A stretch of DNA of 63,217 nt, filler included, from Octopus bimaculoides (GCF_001194135.2; 7 parts of 6 records of this genome joined end to end with filler, not necessarily neighbours in it), one strand, 5' to 3'; positions 19,069-24,271 are shown, counted from the first letter of the whole stretch. Notes: a model not told the origin generated them from the sequence alone. Numbers and translations are program-made.

Positions 19069-19118
19069 TTACGGTTTTAGGCGGATGAAGATGGCCATGG
19101 AATCAGCTGTTTCGAAAC
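19069..19118 (-). CDS. Minus-strand gene, terminal coding exon (50 nt): (G)FETADSMAIFIRLKP-stop
   Basis: Acceptor ttagttttattattttccag|GT; phase 1 matches the upstream donor; TAA at 19071-19069. Confidence 0.82.
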
Positions 19119-19255
19119 CTGGAAAATAATAAAACTAACAATGACAACAACAACAACAACATAAACAGCAAAATTAACAAGAAAACAATCAGTAATAACA
19201 AATGCATTTTTGGATTTAATTTCTATATTGAAGCACAAAAATATTTCCCTACATT

Positions 19256-19362
19256 AAGGTAGCGAGCTGGCAGAAGCGTTAGTACAAATTGAGAGTAGGG
19301 ATCGAAGTAAACGACTTACTCACTCGCCCGAAATTTCTGGCCTTGTACTAAAATTTTAGATC
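19256..19362 (+). mobile_element. SINE family B, internally deleted
   Basis: Head GCGAGCTGGCAGAAGCGTTAG fused to the tail GAAATTTCTGGCCTTGTAC; AATATTTCCCT on both flanks. Confidence 0.65.
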
Positions 19363-19590
19363 AATATTTCCCTTCGTTATTGATGACATAATCAAATCTA
19401 TTTGGAAAATAATTGATTCTTGGGATGTAAAGATCTTCAGCTTTCGATCGAAAGGAACATTCGATACTGTTTGTGACCTCATCACAATTGACAAAATGTC
19501 TCCTCTCTAAACAACGTTGGAATGGTTTGAAAAGATGGTAGTCAGATGGAGCAAAACCAGGGGAATGAGGGGGATGAGACAAAACCACTA
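19361..19590 (-). mobile_element. Mariner transposase C-terminal relic
   Basis: HPPHSPGFAPSDYHLF...RFDYVINNEGKY-stop (YSPDLAPSDYHLF motif family). Confidence 0.85.
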
Positions 19591-19621
19591 TGTTTTGTGC
19601 TGTAATATTTCCCTTTGTGTT

Positions 19622-19820
19622 AAGGCGACGAGCTGGCAGAATCGTTACCGCGCAGAATGCTTAGCGGCATTTCATAAGTCTTTAGGTTCTGAGTCCGAAT
19701 TCCGCGGAGGTCTACTTTGCCTTTCATCCTTTCGGGGTCGATAAAATAAGTAAAAATCGACTGCTCGGGTCGATGTTATCGACTTAACCCTTCCCCCCGA
19801 AATTACTGGCCTTGTGCCAA
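19622..19820 (+). mobile_element. SINE family B
   Basis: GGCGACGAGCTGGCAGAATCG...CCTTTCATCCTTTCGGGGTCGATAAA; ATTTCCCTTYGTG on both flanks. Confidence 0.85.
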
Positions 19821-19849
19821 AATTTCCCTTCGTGATTTGAGCAATATGT

Positions 19850-20090
19850 TCCTTGCTCCAGTTCATTCAGTTGTAGAAATGAGTTGCGATGTAATAGTTG
19901 CCAAGCTGTATCGGTCTTTGCCTTTCCCTTGAAATGCATCGGTGGCGTGGAGAGGAGAGACTGGCAGGCATGGGTGACTACTGGTCAGCCATAAACAAGC
20001 TTGCAGGGACTTGTCTCGTAGAGGGGAACATTCTAGGTGCAATGCCGAGGCTATTCATGAGCCCAAAGGGGTCAAATAGACTACGGTTGA
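19850..20090 (+). mobile_element. Probable SINE 3' portion (family D)
   Basis: GC-balanced block starting CTCCAGTTCATTCAGTTGTAGAAATGAG, similar to the post-core segment of family C; single copy here. Confidence 0.45.
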
Positions 20091-20146
20091 GAAGCACTGG
20101 ACTAATATATCCATGCTTAAATTCAGTCTTATGCAAGTACAAGAGA

Positions 20147-20149
20147 CTA

Positions 20150-20207
<58 letters not shown>

Positions 20208-20237
20208 CACTAGTGCTGCTGCTGCTGCTGCTGCTGC
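20147..20237. repeat. (TAC)n-(TGC)n compound microsatellite
   Basis: Directly visible. Confidence 0.95.
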
Positions 20238-20401
20238 TTCTACAACCTTAATATTTGAAGAAGACAACTTTATTTCTAAAACTTCCATTCCAAATAGTGT
20301 ATTTTTAAATATTTTATATCTGCGCTACATCTCAATCAGTTCCATCAGCAAACATCACCATGGATACAATTCCTGGATAACACATAGCATCAGGCGGAAA
20401 G

Positions 20402-20718
20402 GGGCGTGGCTAAGTGCTTAGGGGTATTCAGCTCACAATAGTAAGGTCATGAGTTCGATACCCTGGTAGCGCGTTGTGTCTTGAGCAAGGTACTTTATTT
20501 CAACTTGCTCTAGTTCACTCAGCTGCTTGAAAATACCCCTTGTATTTCAAAGGGCCATCATTATTCATATTCTGTGTCGTGCTAAATTTCTCTCAGAACT
20601 ACGTTAAGGGTACGCGTATTTGTGGAGTACTCAGCCACTTGCACGTTAATTTCGCGAGAAAGCTGTTCCGTTGGTCGGATCAACTGGAACACCTGTCGTC
20701 GTAACCGACGGAGTGCCA
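20402..20718 (+). mobile_element. SINE family C (tRNA-derived), full length
   Basis: GGCGTGGCTAAGTGCTTAG A-box, GAGTTCGATACC B-box, TTGAGCAAGG core; its 3' half matches 21861-22051. Confidence 0.85.
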
Positions 20719-20766
20719 TCAGACAGGATTACAACAAGAAAACTTTAGACATAAATTCACTTTATT

Positions 20767-21127
20767 ACGTGGTTGTAAGGTAAGAAGCGTGCTTTCCGAC
20801 GACATAAATGTGGGTTCAGTCCCACAACGGGGAACCTTCAGCAAGTGTCATCTACTCTAGGCCTTGGGCCGATCAAATCTTTGTGACGGGATTTAGTAGA
20901 CTGCAACTGAAAGAAGCTCGACGTGTATGTATGTGTGTGTGTGTCTGTGTGTGTGTGTGTGCATGTTTGTGTATATATATATATATATGTATGTGTGTCT
21001 GTATGTGTGATTATGCCTGCATATTTGTCTCCTATCACCGCCTGACAACCACTGCTGGTATGTTTCCTCCCATTAACTTGATGATACCCCAGCATCGCCG
21101 CAGTCAAATGACTGAAATAAGTAAAAA
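20767..21127 (+). mobile_element. SINE family A
   Basis: GGGTTCAGTCCCAC...GCAAGTGTC...(TG/TA)n...GCAGTCAAATGACTGAAATAAGTAAAA. Confidence 0.8.
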
Positions 21128-21220
21128 ATAAGAGATATCTACACCGAATTTCCCTCAGACATGTTGTCTGTTCATCTCTTGTCTCATTCTTACATGCGTT
21201 TCTTCTTTTCTCTTCTTATA

Positions 21221-21420
21221 CACCCGAGTTGAAAAAATCCTGTCTTGGGATAGGAGAAAATACTGGAGGATCACTTAATTATGATCTTATTCAACATATT
21301 TTCCCACTCATATTTATACAATTATTGCAAGGGTCCTGTAAAAGGACTCGGAAGTTTGAGCCTCCAGCCAAGCATTTTGCGACACCCTTGAAGCCAAGAA
21401 CTTTTCAGCACCCCTTCGTG
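21221..21420 (-). mobile_element. About 200-bp mariner-derived MITE
   Basis: Right terminus GCCAAGAACTTTTCAGCACCCCTTCGTG with a degenerate inverted copy at the left; internal minus-strand relic CNNCINMSG..YVE-stop. Confidence 0.65.
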
Positions 21421-21634
21421 CTAAATTCTCCAGACGTATGGATGTGTGATATTGTATCAAAGGATGATACTCTTTCTTAAGTACTGTGGGACGTATGCTT
21501 TCCTGAGAAGGTATAATAACACCGAAATATGTCCTGAGTTGTTTCTTATGTTTGCCACGCCATCATAAGGCTTTTAGTACTTATTGCATTAACTTGGCCG
21601 TGAGACAAGTTAAAACTGATGACTAAATACTTAC

Positions 21635-21795
21635 CGTTATTCCAATTGATTTTCGAATCTTCACCTGAGTAGATTAATGCAGGCAACTGAAGTAACCGCT
21701 CCCATACACAGGGACTCGTTTGAACAACAGCGAACCAACCCGTGACTCTTTCACAACTTATATCGCTAGATGACACATAGAAACGACGTCCTGTG
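21635..21795 (-). CDS. Minus-strand gene, exon n-1 (161 nt, phase 2-1): TGRRFYVSSSDISCERVTGWFAVVQTSPCVWERLLQLPALIYSGEDSKINWNN(G)
   Basis: Acceptor cttctttttctcccttttacag|C, donor G|gtaagt. Open frame (overlaps track ORF 21546-21776); phases match both neighbouring exons. Confidence 0.9.
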
Positions 21796-21860
21796 CTGTA
21801 AAAGGGAGAAAAAGAAGGTACTGTTATAGTTTTTATTTTGGTGTTATTGTCATTATCTGT

Positions 21861-22051
21861 TGTACCTATATTTCAAAGGGGCCAGCCTTGTCACACTGTG
21901 TCACGCTGAATATCCCCGAGAACTACGTTAAGGGTACACGTGTCTGTGGAGTGTTCAGCCACTTGCACGTTAATTTCACGAGCAGGCTGTTTCCGTTCAT
22001 CGGATCAACTGGAACCCTCGACGTCGTAAGCGACGGAGTGCCAACAACAAC
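21861..22051 (+). mobile_element. SINE family C, 3' half with a (CAA)n tail
   Basis: GAGAACTACGTTAAGGGTAC...CAGCCACTTGCACGTTAATTTC...GACGGAGTGCCA shared with the 20402 copy. Confidence 0.85.
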
Positions 22052-23366
22052 ATTGTCATTATCAGATGTAATTTAAAGGTTTGCCTGGCAACTACGTAAT
22101 TGGGAGGTTTCCAAGTTCGAACCGACACTGCTCGGTGATACAGTGGACAAATACTATCTTCTAATTTACAAGCAGCGAAATCTTTGCGAGTGAAAGTTCC
22201 GTAGAAGTCATTTGTGTGTAGGGCAATATTAAGATGGACAGTCCCTATACATATGTAATTGACTATATTTGTTAGCTAGTTTAAAACTACCGCCTCACCC
22301 CTGGGCGAGGGGACTTTAATGGGGACAAATCTGATGGATATATTTCGGCCAGGTTTTATGTCTGAGAATAACTCCATCTCTTCTTCTTACCCAGCATTCA
22401 CAAAGAGCTAGAACAAAATCCAGTATTTTGTCCTTACTCTTCCGACTAAGGAATATTTCAAAGGGGTCATTCTTAGTCGAAAATGATCAATGGTCAAATG
22501 TATTCCAGTTATTACTTTCCACTCTTCGGACTACATTTCCAATATATTCTATATTTATTCTTTTAAGACGGTTGGGTGAGATTTCTAGCGATATTTAGTG
22601 ACTGTTATTCCTAGCAAATGAAACTATTATATAGACAGAGGTTACTGACAACTTTTGTAATTCTAGATCCATAAAGAATTACCCAAAATGTCCCTATGCA
22701 CTAATCAGGTGATTATCAAATTCATCATCATCACCAATCAATATAAGTGTACATATGTCATTCTATGTTGTTATTAACTGATTTTCTTTTAATTACCTTA
22801 TAGATAATAAGAGATTGAAGAGGAAAGGAAATCATTCAAATTTTCCATATATGGTCATAAGTAAATGGATCTCGCTCTGTTTCGAAGATGACTCTGAGTA
22901 TTCACTTGTTTGATCAAGTGAAAATCCTGCTCAACGAATTAGTAGCGTGCAATTGAAACCACACACTTATAATCACAAACTGGACATCCTCACCACTATG
23001 CCTAGTGCCTTCATTGCTAGACAAATGTATGTATATATTTATATGTCTGCGGGCGCGCACGTGTGTGTATGCTTAGTTGTTAGTAGTGAATTCACACACA
23101 AATTTCGACGAATGCAACGAAATTAATCCTTAGGTTTTGCAGGTGAAAATTAATTAATATCAATTCCGGAATTAAATTGATAACAATTATTGCAATGTTA
23201 GAAATATAGGGGAGGTGTATATAGCTGATTATATAGACACTGTACTTCACCGGTACTTTATTCATAGACACCAACAGAGTACAAGGGAATTTTAATCACA
23301 AAAGGTTTTGAACACAGAATGTAATTACAAATAGCTAATAAATATACAGTGATAATAATCACTTAC

Positions 23367-23527
23367 TGCAATCTGATTGTGAAAAATCTTATAGTGCTTT
23401 GAGGTAAGTCACACCAAGGAGAACTTCTCAACTTTCCAAGAGAGAACCAGCTTTCAAGGGTTGTATTTCGTCCATCGAACACCATATTAACCACGGCTGT
23501 TTGGTTTTTATAAGCAACTAGTTTCAC
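23367..23527 (-). CDS. Minus-strand gene, exon n-2 (161 nt, phase 0-2): VKLVAYKNQTAVVNMVFDGRNTTLESWFSLGKLRSSPWCDLPQSTIRFFTIRL(H)
   Basis: On the minus strand: poly-T+AG acceptor (ttttttttttttttag|GTG), donor CA|gtaagt. Open frame; the split codon CA|C joins in frame to exon 21795-21635. Confidence 0.88.
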
Positions 23528-23560
23528 CTAAAAAAAAAAAAAAGGTTGTGGGTCATTATT

Positions 23561-23752
23561 CAGTGAGAAAGTAGCGCATGCAATCAAAGTGAGACTGGGG
23601 TACAAATATACGAAATCCAATATACCCATCATGACTACCCGTCTGATAAGTGTACGCCAGGCACAGGCATCGCAACCATATCTGCGCGACATGGTGATCT
23701 CATATCAAGATAAACAGCGCATGATCTTGCAGGTGGGGCCCAGTTAGATTTT
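23561..23752 (-). mobile_element. Second, partial copy of the (AAT)n-inserted element
   Basis: Reverse complement aligns with 3753-3944 (e.g. CTAACTGGGCCCCACCTGC, TGTTTATCTTGATATGAGATCACCATGTCGCGCA) and ends at the same point, followed by AATAAT. Confidence 0.85.
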
Positions 23753-24271
23753 ACTCCCTCCTCCTCCTCCTCCTCCTCCTCNNNNNNNNNNNNNNNNNNN
23801 NNNNNNNNNNNNNNNNNNNNNNNNNNNNNNNNNNNNNNNNNNNNNNNNNNNNNNNNNNNNNNNNNNNNNNNNNNNNNNNNNNNNNNNNNNNNNNNNNNNN
23901 NNNNNNNNNNNNNNNNNNNNNNNNNNNNNNNNNNNNNNNNNNNNNNNNNNNNNNNNNNNNNNNNNNNNNNNNNNNNNNNNNNNNNNNNNNNNNNNNNNNN
24001 NNNNNNNNNNNNNNNNNNNNNNNNNNNNNNNNNNNNNNNNNNNNNNNNNNNNNNNNNNNNNNNNNNNNNNNNNNNNNNNNNNNNNNNNNNNNNNNNNNNN
24101 NNNNNNNNNNNNNNNNNNNNNNNNNNNNNNNNNNNNNNNNNNNNNNNNNNNNNNNNNNNNNNNNNNNNNNNNNNNNNNNNNNNNNNNNNNNNNNNNNNNN
24201 NNNNNNNNNNNNNNNNNNNNNNNNNNNNNNNNNNNNNNNNNNNNNNNNNNNNNNNNNNNNNNNNNNNNNNC

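What the first reader, a model, noticed from the sequence alone, without database searches (positions are those of the whole stretch)
19069..23527. Hidden three-exon minus-strand gene end encoding an uncharacterised Trp/Cys-rich domain
Seen: three exons with textbook GT-AG sites and complementary phases (0-2, 2-1, 1-stop) splice into 123 aa without stops: VKLVAYKNQTAVVNMVFDGRNTTLESWFSLGKLRSSPWCDLPQSTIRFFTIRLHTGRRFYVSSSDISCERVTGWFAVVQTSPCVWERLLQLPALIYSGEDSKINWNNGFETADSMAIFIRLKP. Only the middle exon shows up in the ORF track. It has two N-glycosylation sequons (NQT, NTT) and three Cys. Inference: the motif order V.L..Y...FDG...WF...SSPW.DL...RRFY...C...GW..V...C.WE...P..IYS...W...AD.MAIF resembles a C-terminal domain I associate with uncharacterised, often expanded molluscan secreted proteins. 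I cannot assign it a named function; a lectin-like or recognition role is conjecture.
Basis: partly seen in the sequence, partly recalled or inferred. Interest (0 to 1): 0.8.

Follow-up and report, generated by a model that had tools for sequence, protein, structure and literature searches.

The report
Octopus gene fragment, divergent fibrinogen-like domain
The three exons are real: they are the last three of five exons of an already annotated but uncharacterised Octopus bimaculoides gene, from a tandemly expanded family of small secreted proteins whose main domain is a very divergent fibrinogen-related (lectin-type) domain.

Summary
Exons 23527-23367, 21795-21635 and 19118-19069 (minus strand) have canonical AG/GT sites and matching phases, and splice into 123 aa plus a stop.

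The locus is Octopus bimaculoides LOC106880369. RefSeq models it as 109 aa from an internal Met, so it is not hidden.

Full-length paralogues have five exons and about 296 aa: signal-like N-terminus, degenerate PAN/Apple-like module, then a ~190-aa domain. The window holds exons 3-5. Exon 2 should lie about 250-300 nt beyond the piece edge, inside a 5.4-kb assembly gap.

Pfam and PDB sequence searches find nothing for the domain. A profile search finds 960 representative relatives in molluscs, amphioxus, echinoderms and Myxococcota.

In the bacterial relatives the same domain follows a canonical fibrinogen-domain head (CDM..GGGW; Pfam Fibrinogen_C positions 2-52). Their predicted structure matches 117 solved fibrinogen-related domains. 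The octopus domain is therefore a head-less, divergent fibrinogen-related domain.

Octopod paralogues vary most in the exon-4 region. A recognition or lectin role is plausible but untested.

Whether this copy is functional is open: dN/dS is about 1 against its nearest duplicate, yet the reading frame is intact.

The parts
23367..23527 (-). Exon 3 of 5 (161 nt, phase 0 to 2). It encodes VKLVAYKNQTAVVNMVFDGRNTTLESWFSLGKLRSSPWCDLPQSTIRFFTIRL plus the first two bases of the His codon. It carries both N-glycosylation sequons.
   Evidence: AG acceptor after T14, GTAAGT donor. tblastn against P0003/P0004/P0005 gives E 1e-18 to 4e-20. The exon start matches those in L002, L003 and L004.
21796..23366 (-). 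Intron 3 (1571 nt). It contains interspersed repeats.
   Evidence: It is colinear with, and 81% identical to, the intron of the duplicate locus L004. The repeat at 21856-22049 recurs in L003.
21635..21795 (-). Exon 4 of 5 (161 nt, phase 2 to 1). It encodes (H)TGRRFYVSSSDISCERVTGWFAVVQTSPCVWERLLQLPALIYSGEDSKINWNN(G). It holds the conserved Cys pair and GW motif, and is the hypervariable part of the family.
   Evidence: Mean entropy is 1.85 bits among 21 octopod paralogues, against 0.86-1.14 elsewhere.
19119..21634 (-). Intron 4 (2516 nt). It contains SINE-like repeats, microsatellites and a mariner-like remnant.
19069..19118 (-). Exon 5 coding part (50 nt). It encodes (G)FETADSMAIFIRLKP plus the TAA stop. 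This is the highly conserved last beta-strand of the domain.
   Evidence: It is 100% identical to the C-terminus of O. sinensis P0003. The AF2 model has strands at residues 185-188 and 190-197 here.
23528..26878 (-). The 3' part of intron 2, interrupted by two N gaps (23792-24270 and about 25990-26231). No exon 1 or exon 2 sequence is present. The outermost 230 nt (26650-26878) are homologous to O. sinensis intron 2 at 255-440 nt downstream of its exon 2.
   Evidence: tblastn found no N-terminal exons. Alignment A6. The piece equals L001 6608-15545 and is bounded by N gaps.

Best explanation
Locus. The window holds exons 3-5 of a five-exon Octopus bimaculoides gene, LOC106880369, on scaffold CM046628.1 at about 13.5 Mb.

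Family. The gene belongs to a tandemly expanded octopod family. Full-length members are about 296-aa proteins with three parts:
- a hydrophobic signal-like N-terminus;
- a degenerate PAN/Apple-like module;
- a ~190-aa globular domain, of which the window encodes the C-terminal 123 aa.

The domain. It is a highly divergent fibrinogen-related domain (FReD). It has lost the canonical N-terminal head (Cys...CDM..GGG), keeping only the Trp of GGGW. It retains the central sheet, a Cys...GW...Cys segment and the final strand.

Likely mechanism (inferred, not shown). The protein is secreted and N-glycosylated. It acts as a soluble recognition or lectin-type module. Its conserved scaffold (FDG, SWF, SSPW, RRFY, C, GW, C, P..YS, ADSMAIFI) presents hypervariable loops, encoded mainly by exon 4, as the ligand-binding surface. 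This would be analogous to the P subdomain of ficolins, tachylectin-5 and snail FREPs.

Missing exons. The 5' exons are missing from the assembly, not demonstrably from the genome.
For: Gene structure (shown):
- Splice sites and phases check out.
- The piece is identical to the RefSeq locus.
- The five-exon structure of the full-length paralogue P0007 and of the O. sinensis locus has the same intron positions.
- The piece edge aligns to intron 2 just downstream of exon 2.

Family (shown):
- The profile search finds 960 representatives at E<=1e-3 and 521 at E<=1e-10.
- Many are octopod loci on one scaffold.
- The domain occurs in extracellular mosaics with ZP, EGF, VWD, fn3, C-type lectin, F5/8C and TSP1. 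A PAN domain is found in 11 of 34 members.

FReD link (shown, three lines):
1. The AF2 model of the octopod domain is confident (pLDDT 89, pTM 0.85). Its best PDB matches are intelectin-1 followed by a long run dominated by FReDs, although these are weak (E 8e-3 to 0.5, TM 0.25-0.41).
2. An octopod-only HMM hits bacterial proteins P0212, P0213 and P0040 at E 3e-14 to 2e-6, scaled to 1.8e9 sequences, over profile positions 63-199. In these proteins the domain is directly preceded by a Pfam Fibrinogen_C head (positions 2-52, E 2e-7 to 9e-9). That head also hits FIBCD1, angiopoietin, intelectin and fibrinogen in the PDB.
3. The AF2 model of P0213 gives 117 PDB hits at E<=1e-3. The 50 matches listed are all FReDs, with probability 1.0 and TM up to 0.52 over the full length.

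Hypervariability (shown): entropy peaks in the exon-4 region.

Reading frame (shown): the frame is intact in both duplicates. Under neutral drift the joint probability of this is about 0.008.
Against: - Pfam Fibrinogen_C does not match any octopod or other animal member tested.
- The direct Foldseek matches of the octopod model are below significance. FReD homology therefore rests on transitive evidence.
- The Ca2+/acetyl-binding motif I remember in canonical FReDs (acidic cluster before the first P-subdomain Cys) is not visible in the alignment. Ligand type is unknown.
- No binding, secretion or expression data exist here.
- For this particular copy, dN/dS is 0.97 against its nearest duplicate, and no signal-peptide exon is in the assembly.
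- The family-conserved Asp in C..D.GW is Val in this copy.
- The closest O. sinensis relative has an in-frame stop in exon 1. Members of this subclade may be decaying.
Confidence: 0.7

Rival explanations
1. The locus is a pseudogene: a 5'-truncated duplicate drifting neutrally. RefSeq's 109-aa model, which has no signal peptide, would then be an annotation artefact of a dead copy.
For: - dN 0.142, dS 0.147, so omega is 0.97 against the nearest duplicate L004.
- Exon identity (80-94%) is about the same as intron identity (81-97%).
- Exons 1-2 were found neither in the piece nor in 10 kb upstream.
- The sister locus L004 lacks them as well.
- The O. sinensis relative has an in-frame stop in exon 1.
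- One 90%-conserved Asp is lost in this copy.
Against: - Both duplicates keep 372 nt with no indel and no stop. Given the intron indel density and 48 substitutions, the joint probability of this is about 0.008.
- All six splice signals are canonical.
- Every family-invariant residue in the encoded part is retained, and so are all near-invariant ones except a single Asp.
- The upstream sequence is mostly N. The piece edge is homologous to intron 2 only about 255 nt from where exon 2 should be, so the absence is most simply an assembly gap.
- An omega near 1 is also expected if a hypervariable binding region is under diversifying selection.
Confidence: 0.3
2. The domain is not related to fibrinogen domains. 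It is an independent fold that bacteria happened to fuse behind a fibrinogen-type head.
For: - Pfam's Fibrinogen_C model stops at position 52 in the bacterial proteins.
- The octopod model alone gives no Foldseek hit at E<=1e-3, and TM is at most 0.41.
Against: - The octopod model lacks the head, yet it still retrieves intelectin and then mostly FReDs as its top hits.
- The bacterial model aligns to FReDs over 123-131 columns at about 4 A, and over about 255 columns at TM 0.47-0.52. That is far beyond the 50-residue head.
- The conserved Trp of the animal proteins aligns with the Trp of GGGW.
Confidence: 0.15
3. The family acts through protein-protein binding rather than as a lectin. Possible roles are matrix, egg-coat or adhesion component, or receptor ligand, as with the tenascin and angiopoietin FReDs.
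For: - In amphioxus and echinoderms the domain sits in ZP, VWD, EGF, fn3 and TSP1 mosaics typical of matrix and egg-coat proteins.
- No canonical Ca2+/acetyl-site motif is visible.
Against: - The domain is also fused to C-type lectin and F5/8C modules.
- Tandem expansion with a hypervariable region is the pattern seen in recognition repertoires.
- Neither point is decisive.
Confidence: 0.3

Closest known systems
Fibrinogen-related domain (FReD; Pfam PF00147 Fibrinogen_C): ficolins, tachylectin-5A, FIBCD1, angiopoietins, tenascin, snail FREPs
   Same: - It is an extracellular globular domain of about 200 aa.
- Bacterial members of the same family carry the canonical FReD head, and their model matches 117 solved FReDs.
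- The conserved Trp aligns with the W of GGGW.
- There is a Cys...GW...Cys segment late in the domain.
- Invertebrate gene families are expanded and variable.
   Different: - Animal members lack the first ~35-40 residues (first Cys pair, CDM, GGG).
- There is no Pfam match.
- No acidic Ca2+-site motif is visible.
- The spacing between GW and the second Cys is longer.
- The octopod N-terminal partner is a PAN/Apple-like module. As I recall, FREPs pair the domain with IgSF, ficolins with collagen and angiopoietins with a coiled coil.
Intelectins / X-type lectins (human ITLN1, Xenopus XEEL)
   Same: - Only a short fibrinogen-like segment is recognisable by sequence, and the rest is divergent.
- Intelectin-1 is the top Foldseek hit of the octopod model.
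- XEEL and ITLN1 are hit by the bacterial head.
   Different: - TM is only 0.25.
- Intelectins keep the head and are about 280 aa.
- No sequence similarity was detected to the intelectin-specific part.
RefSeq LOC106880369 and its octopod paralogues (LOC106873068, LOC106881038 and others; 'uncharacterized protein' or 'Apple domain-containing protein')
   Same: - It is the same locus (100% identity).
- It has the same exon structure and motif order.
   Different: - The RefSeq model starts at an internal Met and lacks 14 aa of exon 3 and all of exons 1-2.
- No source assigns a function or domain.

Membership tests
Fibrinogen-related domain (Pfam PF00147) | Significant match to the Fibrinogen_C profile | tested here: not met
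   There were no Pfam hits at E<=10 for the 123-aa peptide, P0003 or P0004. None of the 34 family members matched at E<=1. Only the bacterial relatives match, and only over profile positions 2-52.
Fibrinogen-related domain (Pfam PF00147) | N-terminal head: Cys ... Y.I.P ... V.CDM..GGGWT | tested here: not met
   In alignment A5 the octopod proteins read ISFYRYSQWIK at this place, so only the Trp is kept. In any case the head lies outside the window. It is present in bacterial members P0040, P0212 and P0213.
Fibrinogen-related domain (Pfam PF00147) | FReD three-dimensional fold | tested here: inconclusive
   Octopod model: the best hits are intelectin and FReDs, but with E>=8e-3 and TM<=0.41. 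Bacterial family member: 117 FReD hits at E<=1e-3, probability 1.0, TM up to 0.52. Homology to the octopod domain is by HMM (E 3e-14).
Fibrinogen-related domain (Pfam PF00147) | Late disulfide bracketing the GGWW segment (P subdomain) | tested here: inconclusive
   A conserved Cys pair flanks GW: C159 is invariant and C144 is at least 90% conserved in P0003 numbering. In the window these are the Cys in ISCER and in SPCVW. Equivalence to the FReD disulfide, and bond formation itself, were not verified.
Fibrinogen-related domain (Pfam PF00147) | Ca2+ site and acetyl-binding pocket (feature recalled from ficolin and TL5A structures) | tested here: inconclusive
   No acidic cluster precedes the first late Cys in the family consensus RRFxIxxxYxGC. 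Positional equivalence could not be established without a structural alignment.
Octopod PAN-like + head-less FReD-like family (unnamed) | Motif order FDG..SWF..SSPW.DL..RRFY..C..GW..C.WE..P..YS..W..ADSMAIFI, and shared intron positions and phases | tested here: met
   (motifs). (intron positions, with phases read for L002 and L004).
Octopod PAN-like + head-less FReD-like family (unnamed) | Signal-like N-terminus and PAN/Apple-like module in the same gene | not testable with these tools
   Exons 1-2 fall in a 5.4-kb assembly gap. Paralogue P0007 has them. Pfam PAN does not match the octopod N-terminus itself. The 'Apple domain' label comes from UniRef.
Intelectin / X-type lectin | Fold and sequence of the intelectin-specific region | tested here: not met
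   It is the top Foldseek hit, but TM is 0.25 and rmsd 12.9 A. The PDB sequence search found no match.
Pfam DUF7922 | Profile match | tested here: not met
   A weak summed hit appeared in the four-copy amphioxus protein P0006. It was not reproduced on a single repeat or on other members.

The most novel reading that the evidence does not exclude
The octopod genes form a previously unrecognised recognition repertoire: a head-less fibrinogen-type domain paired with a PAN-like module, tandemly amplified and diversifying in its loop region. This would be functionally analogous to snail FREPs but of independent architecture. The full-length ancestral form survives in predatory Myxococcota, or was transferred to them.
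Probability: 0.25. Interest if true: 0.6.

Novelty: new variant of a known kind. Interest (0 to 1): 0.4.

Why it matters
The gene itself is ordinary: an annotated 'uncharacterized protein' cut short by an assembly gap.

What is useful is the assignment. A family with about a thousand 50%-identity representatives across molluscs, amphioxus and echinoderms has no Pfam model, and every source name I saw for it is generic or taken from a partner domain. It can now be placed in the fibrinogen-related superfamily through bacterial bridge sequences.

That placement gives testable hypotheses for an expanded, hypervariable octopod gene cluster: secreted recognition or lectin proteins. It also points to a blind spot in domain-based counts of fibrinogen-related genes in invertebrate immunity studies.

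Tried and rejected
- Pfam on the peptide, on the 199-aa relatives and on 34 family members found nothing for the domain.
- PDB sequence searches with a single sequence and with the profile matched only the PAN part (MIC4 apple domains) or noise.
- DUF7922 looked like a lead from P0006. It did not reproduce on a single repeat, so I dropped it.
- I searched for exons 1-2 by tblastn in the piece, in 10 kb upstream (L001) and in the duplicate L004. None were found.
- I wondered whether a (GAA)n tract at about 25090-25200 marked a degenerate exon 2, as in the O. sinensis intron 1. The alignment showed no similarity beyond the microsatellite.
- The search for related loci with the broad alignment failed because no stretch was conserved enough. 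It worked with P0213 alone.
- Four literature searches found no paper on this family.
- The last large protein search, with a bacterial unit, returned only two proteins. I therefore could not collect canonical FReDs for a profile-profile comparison.
Full report
**1. The observation**

On the minus strand, three segments are each preceded by a polypyrimidine tract and AG: 23527-23367, 21795-21635 and 19118-19069. The first two are followed by GTAAGT.

Their lengths are 161, 161 and 50 nt, giving phases 0-2, 2-1 and 1-stop. The codon directly upstream of the first segment is TAG, so the frame can only continue by splicing.

The peptide has the sequons NQT and NTT, three Cys and five Trp. At the default 60-aa threshold only the middle exon forms a listed ORF. 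At 40 aa the first exon does too.

**2. What the locus is**

The peptide is 100% identical over 109 aa to RefSeq 'uncharacterized protein LOC106880369' of Octopus bimaculoides. It is 61-73% identical to other Octopus proteins.

The piece is identical to scaffold CM046628.1 (GCA_001194135.2) at about 13.53 Mb, and N gaps bound it on both sides. The gene is therefore annotated, not hidden. RefSeq starts it at an internal Met.

The full-length paralogue P0007 (LOC106873068) has 296 aa and lies about 1.4 Mb away on the same scaffold. It has five exons:
- exon 1: signal-like N-terminus plus a Cys-poor PAN/Apple-like module;
- exon 2: ..EWIKAYALSMGA..CPNFFRHPILD.W..LPID.;
- exons 3-5: the equivalents of the window's three exons.

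The O. sinensis locus L002 has the same layout. The window therefore holds exons 3-5.

**3. Where the 5' exons are**

tblastn with the N-terminal halves of P0003, P0004, P0005 and P0007 finds nothing in three places: the piece, the readable parts of 10 kb upstream, and the duplicate locus L004.

However, the outermost 230 nt of the piece (26878-26650, starting in an (AC)n tract) align with O. sinensis intron 2, 255-440 nt downstream of its exon 2. Exon 2 is thus expected about 250-300 nt beyond the piece edge, inside the 5.4-kb N gap (L001 1206-6607). The truncation is most simply an assembly artefact, but I could not show that.

**4. The family**

A profile of five Octopus sequences was searched against 1.84 billion representatives. 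It finds 960 proteins at E<=1e-3 and 521 at E<=1e-10.

Named members come from these groups:
- Octopus bimaculoides, O. sinensis and O. vulgaris, with many loci on one scaffold in each genome;
- Argonauta;
- bivalves;
- Branchiostoma;
- a starfish and a crinoid.

The source names I saw are 'uncharacterized', 'hypothetical' or 'Apple domain-containing', or generic multidomain labels such as SVEP1-like, HMCN1 and VWDE-like.

The domain occurs in three contexts:
- alone behind a PAN domain (11 of 34 members) or a coiled coil;
- in tandem copies;
- in extracellular mosaics with ZP, EGF, VWD, fn3, C-type lectin, F5/8C and TSP1.

Pfam has no model that matches the domain. PDB sequence searches match only the PAN part.

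**5. What the domain is**

*Direct structural search.* An AlphaFold2 model of the 199-aa O. sinensis relative, built with a 34-sequence alignment, is confident (pLDDT 89.4, pTM 0.85). Foldseek against the PDB gives no hit at E<=1e-3. The top of the list is human intelectin-1, followed by a long run dominated by fibrinogen-related domains (E 8e-3 to 0.5, TM 0.25-0.41). On its own this is only a lead.

*Bridge sequences.* The profile search also hit a Myxococcota protein, P0040, at E 9e-33. Its three C-terminal units each begin with a textbook fibrinogen-domain head (SCLEILEAG..GIYEIDP....VFCDMTT.GGGW). They continue directly into ..WF..SRL..SSW.DL...NFFS..GD...RRHFFINRNY.GC..DAGWL.....C.WE....ILYA......ADAL.V.VR.

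Pfam Fibrinogen_C matches these heads at positions 5-52. PDB hits are FIBCD1, angiopoietin-2, XEEL, intelectin-1, fibrinogen beta and gamma, ficolin and tenascin. Two more such proteins, P0212 and P0213, were found. Four Myxococcota, Deltaproteobacteria and Bradymonadaceae MAGs also encode them, one on a 6.9-Mb contig.

*Link back to the octopus domain.* An HMM built only from 21 octopod sequences matches the bacterial proteins. E-values are 3e-14 to 2e-6 when scaled to 1.8e9 sequences. The match covers profile positions 63-199, which is exactly the part the window encodes. In the joint alignment the conserved animal Trp lines up with the W of GGGW.

*Structure of a bridge protein.* The AF2 model of P0213 (pLDDT 80) gives 117 PDB hits at E<=1e-3, and the 50 matches listed are all FReDs with probability 1.0. 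Local alignments cover 123-131 columns at about 4 A. Full-length alignments reach TM 0.47-0.52.

*Conclusion.* I conclude, with about 0.8 confidence, that the family is a divergent branch of the fibrinogen-related superfamily. Its animal members have lost the first 35-40 residues. It fails the sequence-based membership tests for PF00147, so I call it FReD-like and do not file it as a Fibrinogen_C domain.

**6. How it probably works**

Shown:
- The scaffold residues (FDG, SWF, SSPW, RRFY, Cys, GW, Cys, P..YS, ADSMAIFI) are conserved among 21 octopod paralogues.
- The stretch from DLPQS to NWNNG, which is the end of exon 3 plus exon 4, is hypervariable. Mean entropy is 1.85 bits, against 0.86-1.14 elsewhere.
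- Both sequons are conserved in most octopod paralogues.

Inferred:
- The proteins are secreted glycoproteins.
- The variable loops form a ligand-binding surface, comparable to the P subdomain of ficolins, tachylectin-5A and FREPs.
- The conserved Cys pair forms a disulfide.

The canonical Ca2+/acetyl-site motif, as I remember it from ficolin and TL5A structures, is not visible in the alignment. The ligand class is therefore open. A protein-binding role, as for tenascin or angiopoietin, is a serious rival.

**7. Is this copy alive?**

The nearest relative is L004, an unplaced 6.3-kb contig encoding LOC106881038. It is colinear through the introns at 81-97% identity. It is either a recent duplicate or a very divergent haplotype.

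Across the 372 nt, dN is 0.142 and dS is 0.147, so omega is 0.97. Exon identity is no higher than intron identity. That fits neutral drift.

Against that:
- Both copies keep the frame with no indel and no stop. From the intron indel density, 2.8 indels would be expected (P0 = 0.063). The chance of no stop after 48 random substitutions is 0.13. The joint probability is about 0.008.
- All splice signals are canonical.
- Every invariant family residue in the encoded part is kept, and so are all near-invariant ones but one Asp (C..D.GW is CERVTGW here).

The closest O. sinensis locus has an in-frame stop in exon 1. I put the pseudogene reading at about 0.3.

**8. Comparison and novelty**

The gene is known as an uncharacterised RefSeq model. 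Every source name I saw for the family is either generic or borrowed from a partner domain, Pfam has no model for the domain, and four literature searches found nothing on it.

What remains is a new variant of a known kind: a head-less FReD-like domain with a PAN-like partner, tandem expansion and a hypervariable region in octopods.

Interest is moderate at 0.4. The result is useful for annotation and for invertebrate-immunity gene counts, but not surprising in kind.

Noticed in passing
window 24300-24790 (-): A degenerate tail of a non-LTR retrotransposon ORF (..CRVCKQQAEAIDHIVSMC..), with several stops and a frameshift. Pfam zf-RVT matches only weakly (E 0.0037, below the cut-off). The duplicate locus L004 shares the same insertion (window 24670-25118 aligns with L004 17-461 at 82%).
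   Followed up: partly
window 19361-19588 (-): A 75-aa ORF in intron 4 (..HPPHSPGFAPSDYHLFKPFQ..) resembles, from memory, the C-terminal end of a mariner-type transposase. Pfam gave no hit. A longer mariner-like ORF set lies in intron 2 of the O. sinensis locus (L002 10991-11941).
   Followed up: partly
window 25795-25980, 26243-26466, 21856-22049, 20539-20972: Interspersed SINE-like repeats that recur many times, at 75-93% identity, in the paralogue locus L003. Two of them flank the N gap at about 25990-26231.
   Followed up: partly
window 26822-26878, ~25090-25200, 20150-20240, 23765-23790: Long microsatellites: (AC)n, (GAA)n, (CAG)n/(GTA)n and (GAG)n. The (AC)n and (GAG)n tracts sit exactly at assembly breaks, which probably explains the gaps.
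   Followed up: no
L002 9722-10051 (O. sinensis LOC118761914): Exon 1 of the closest O. sinensis relative reads through a signal-like peptide and PAN-like module but contains an in-frame stop (..LQSSP*EIF..). RefSeq therefore starts its 199-aa model at a downstream Met. This could be a pseudogene or a sequencing error.
   Followed up: partly
window 19119-19755 vs L004 5429-6061: The 3' part of intron 4 is 97% identical between the window and its duplicate, whereas the other introns are 81-85% identical. This could reflect gene conversion or uneven divergence.
   Followed up: no
L005-L008; P0040, P0212, P0213: Myxococcota, Bradymonadaceae and 'Deltaproteobacteria' MAGs encode the full form (fibrinogen head plus this domain). 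In P0040 there are three tandem copies behind eight TIG repeats. Whether this reflects ancient origin or horizontal transfer between animals and predatory bacteria is open.
   Followed up: partly
L003 27217-30810 (-): A second family member (303-aa product) lies tail-to-tail about 6 kb from LOC106873068. This shows local tandem or inverted duplication within the cluster.
   Followed up: no
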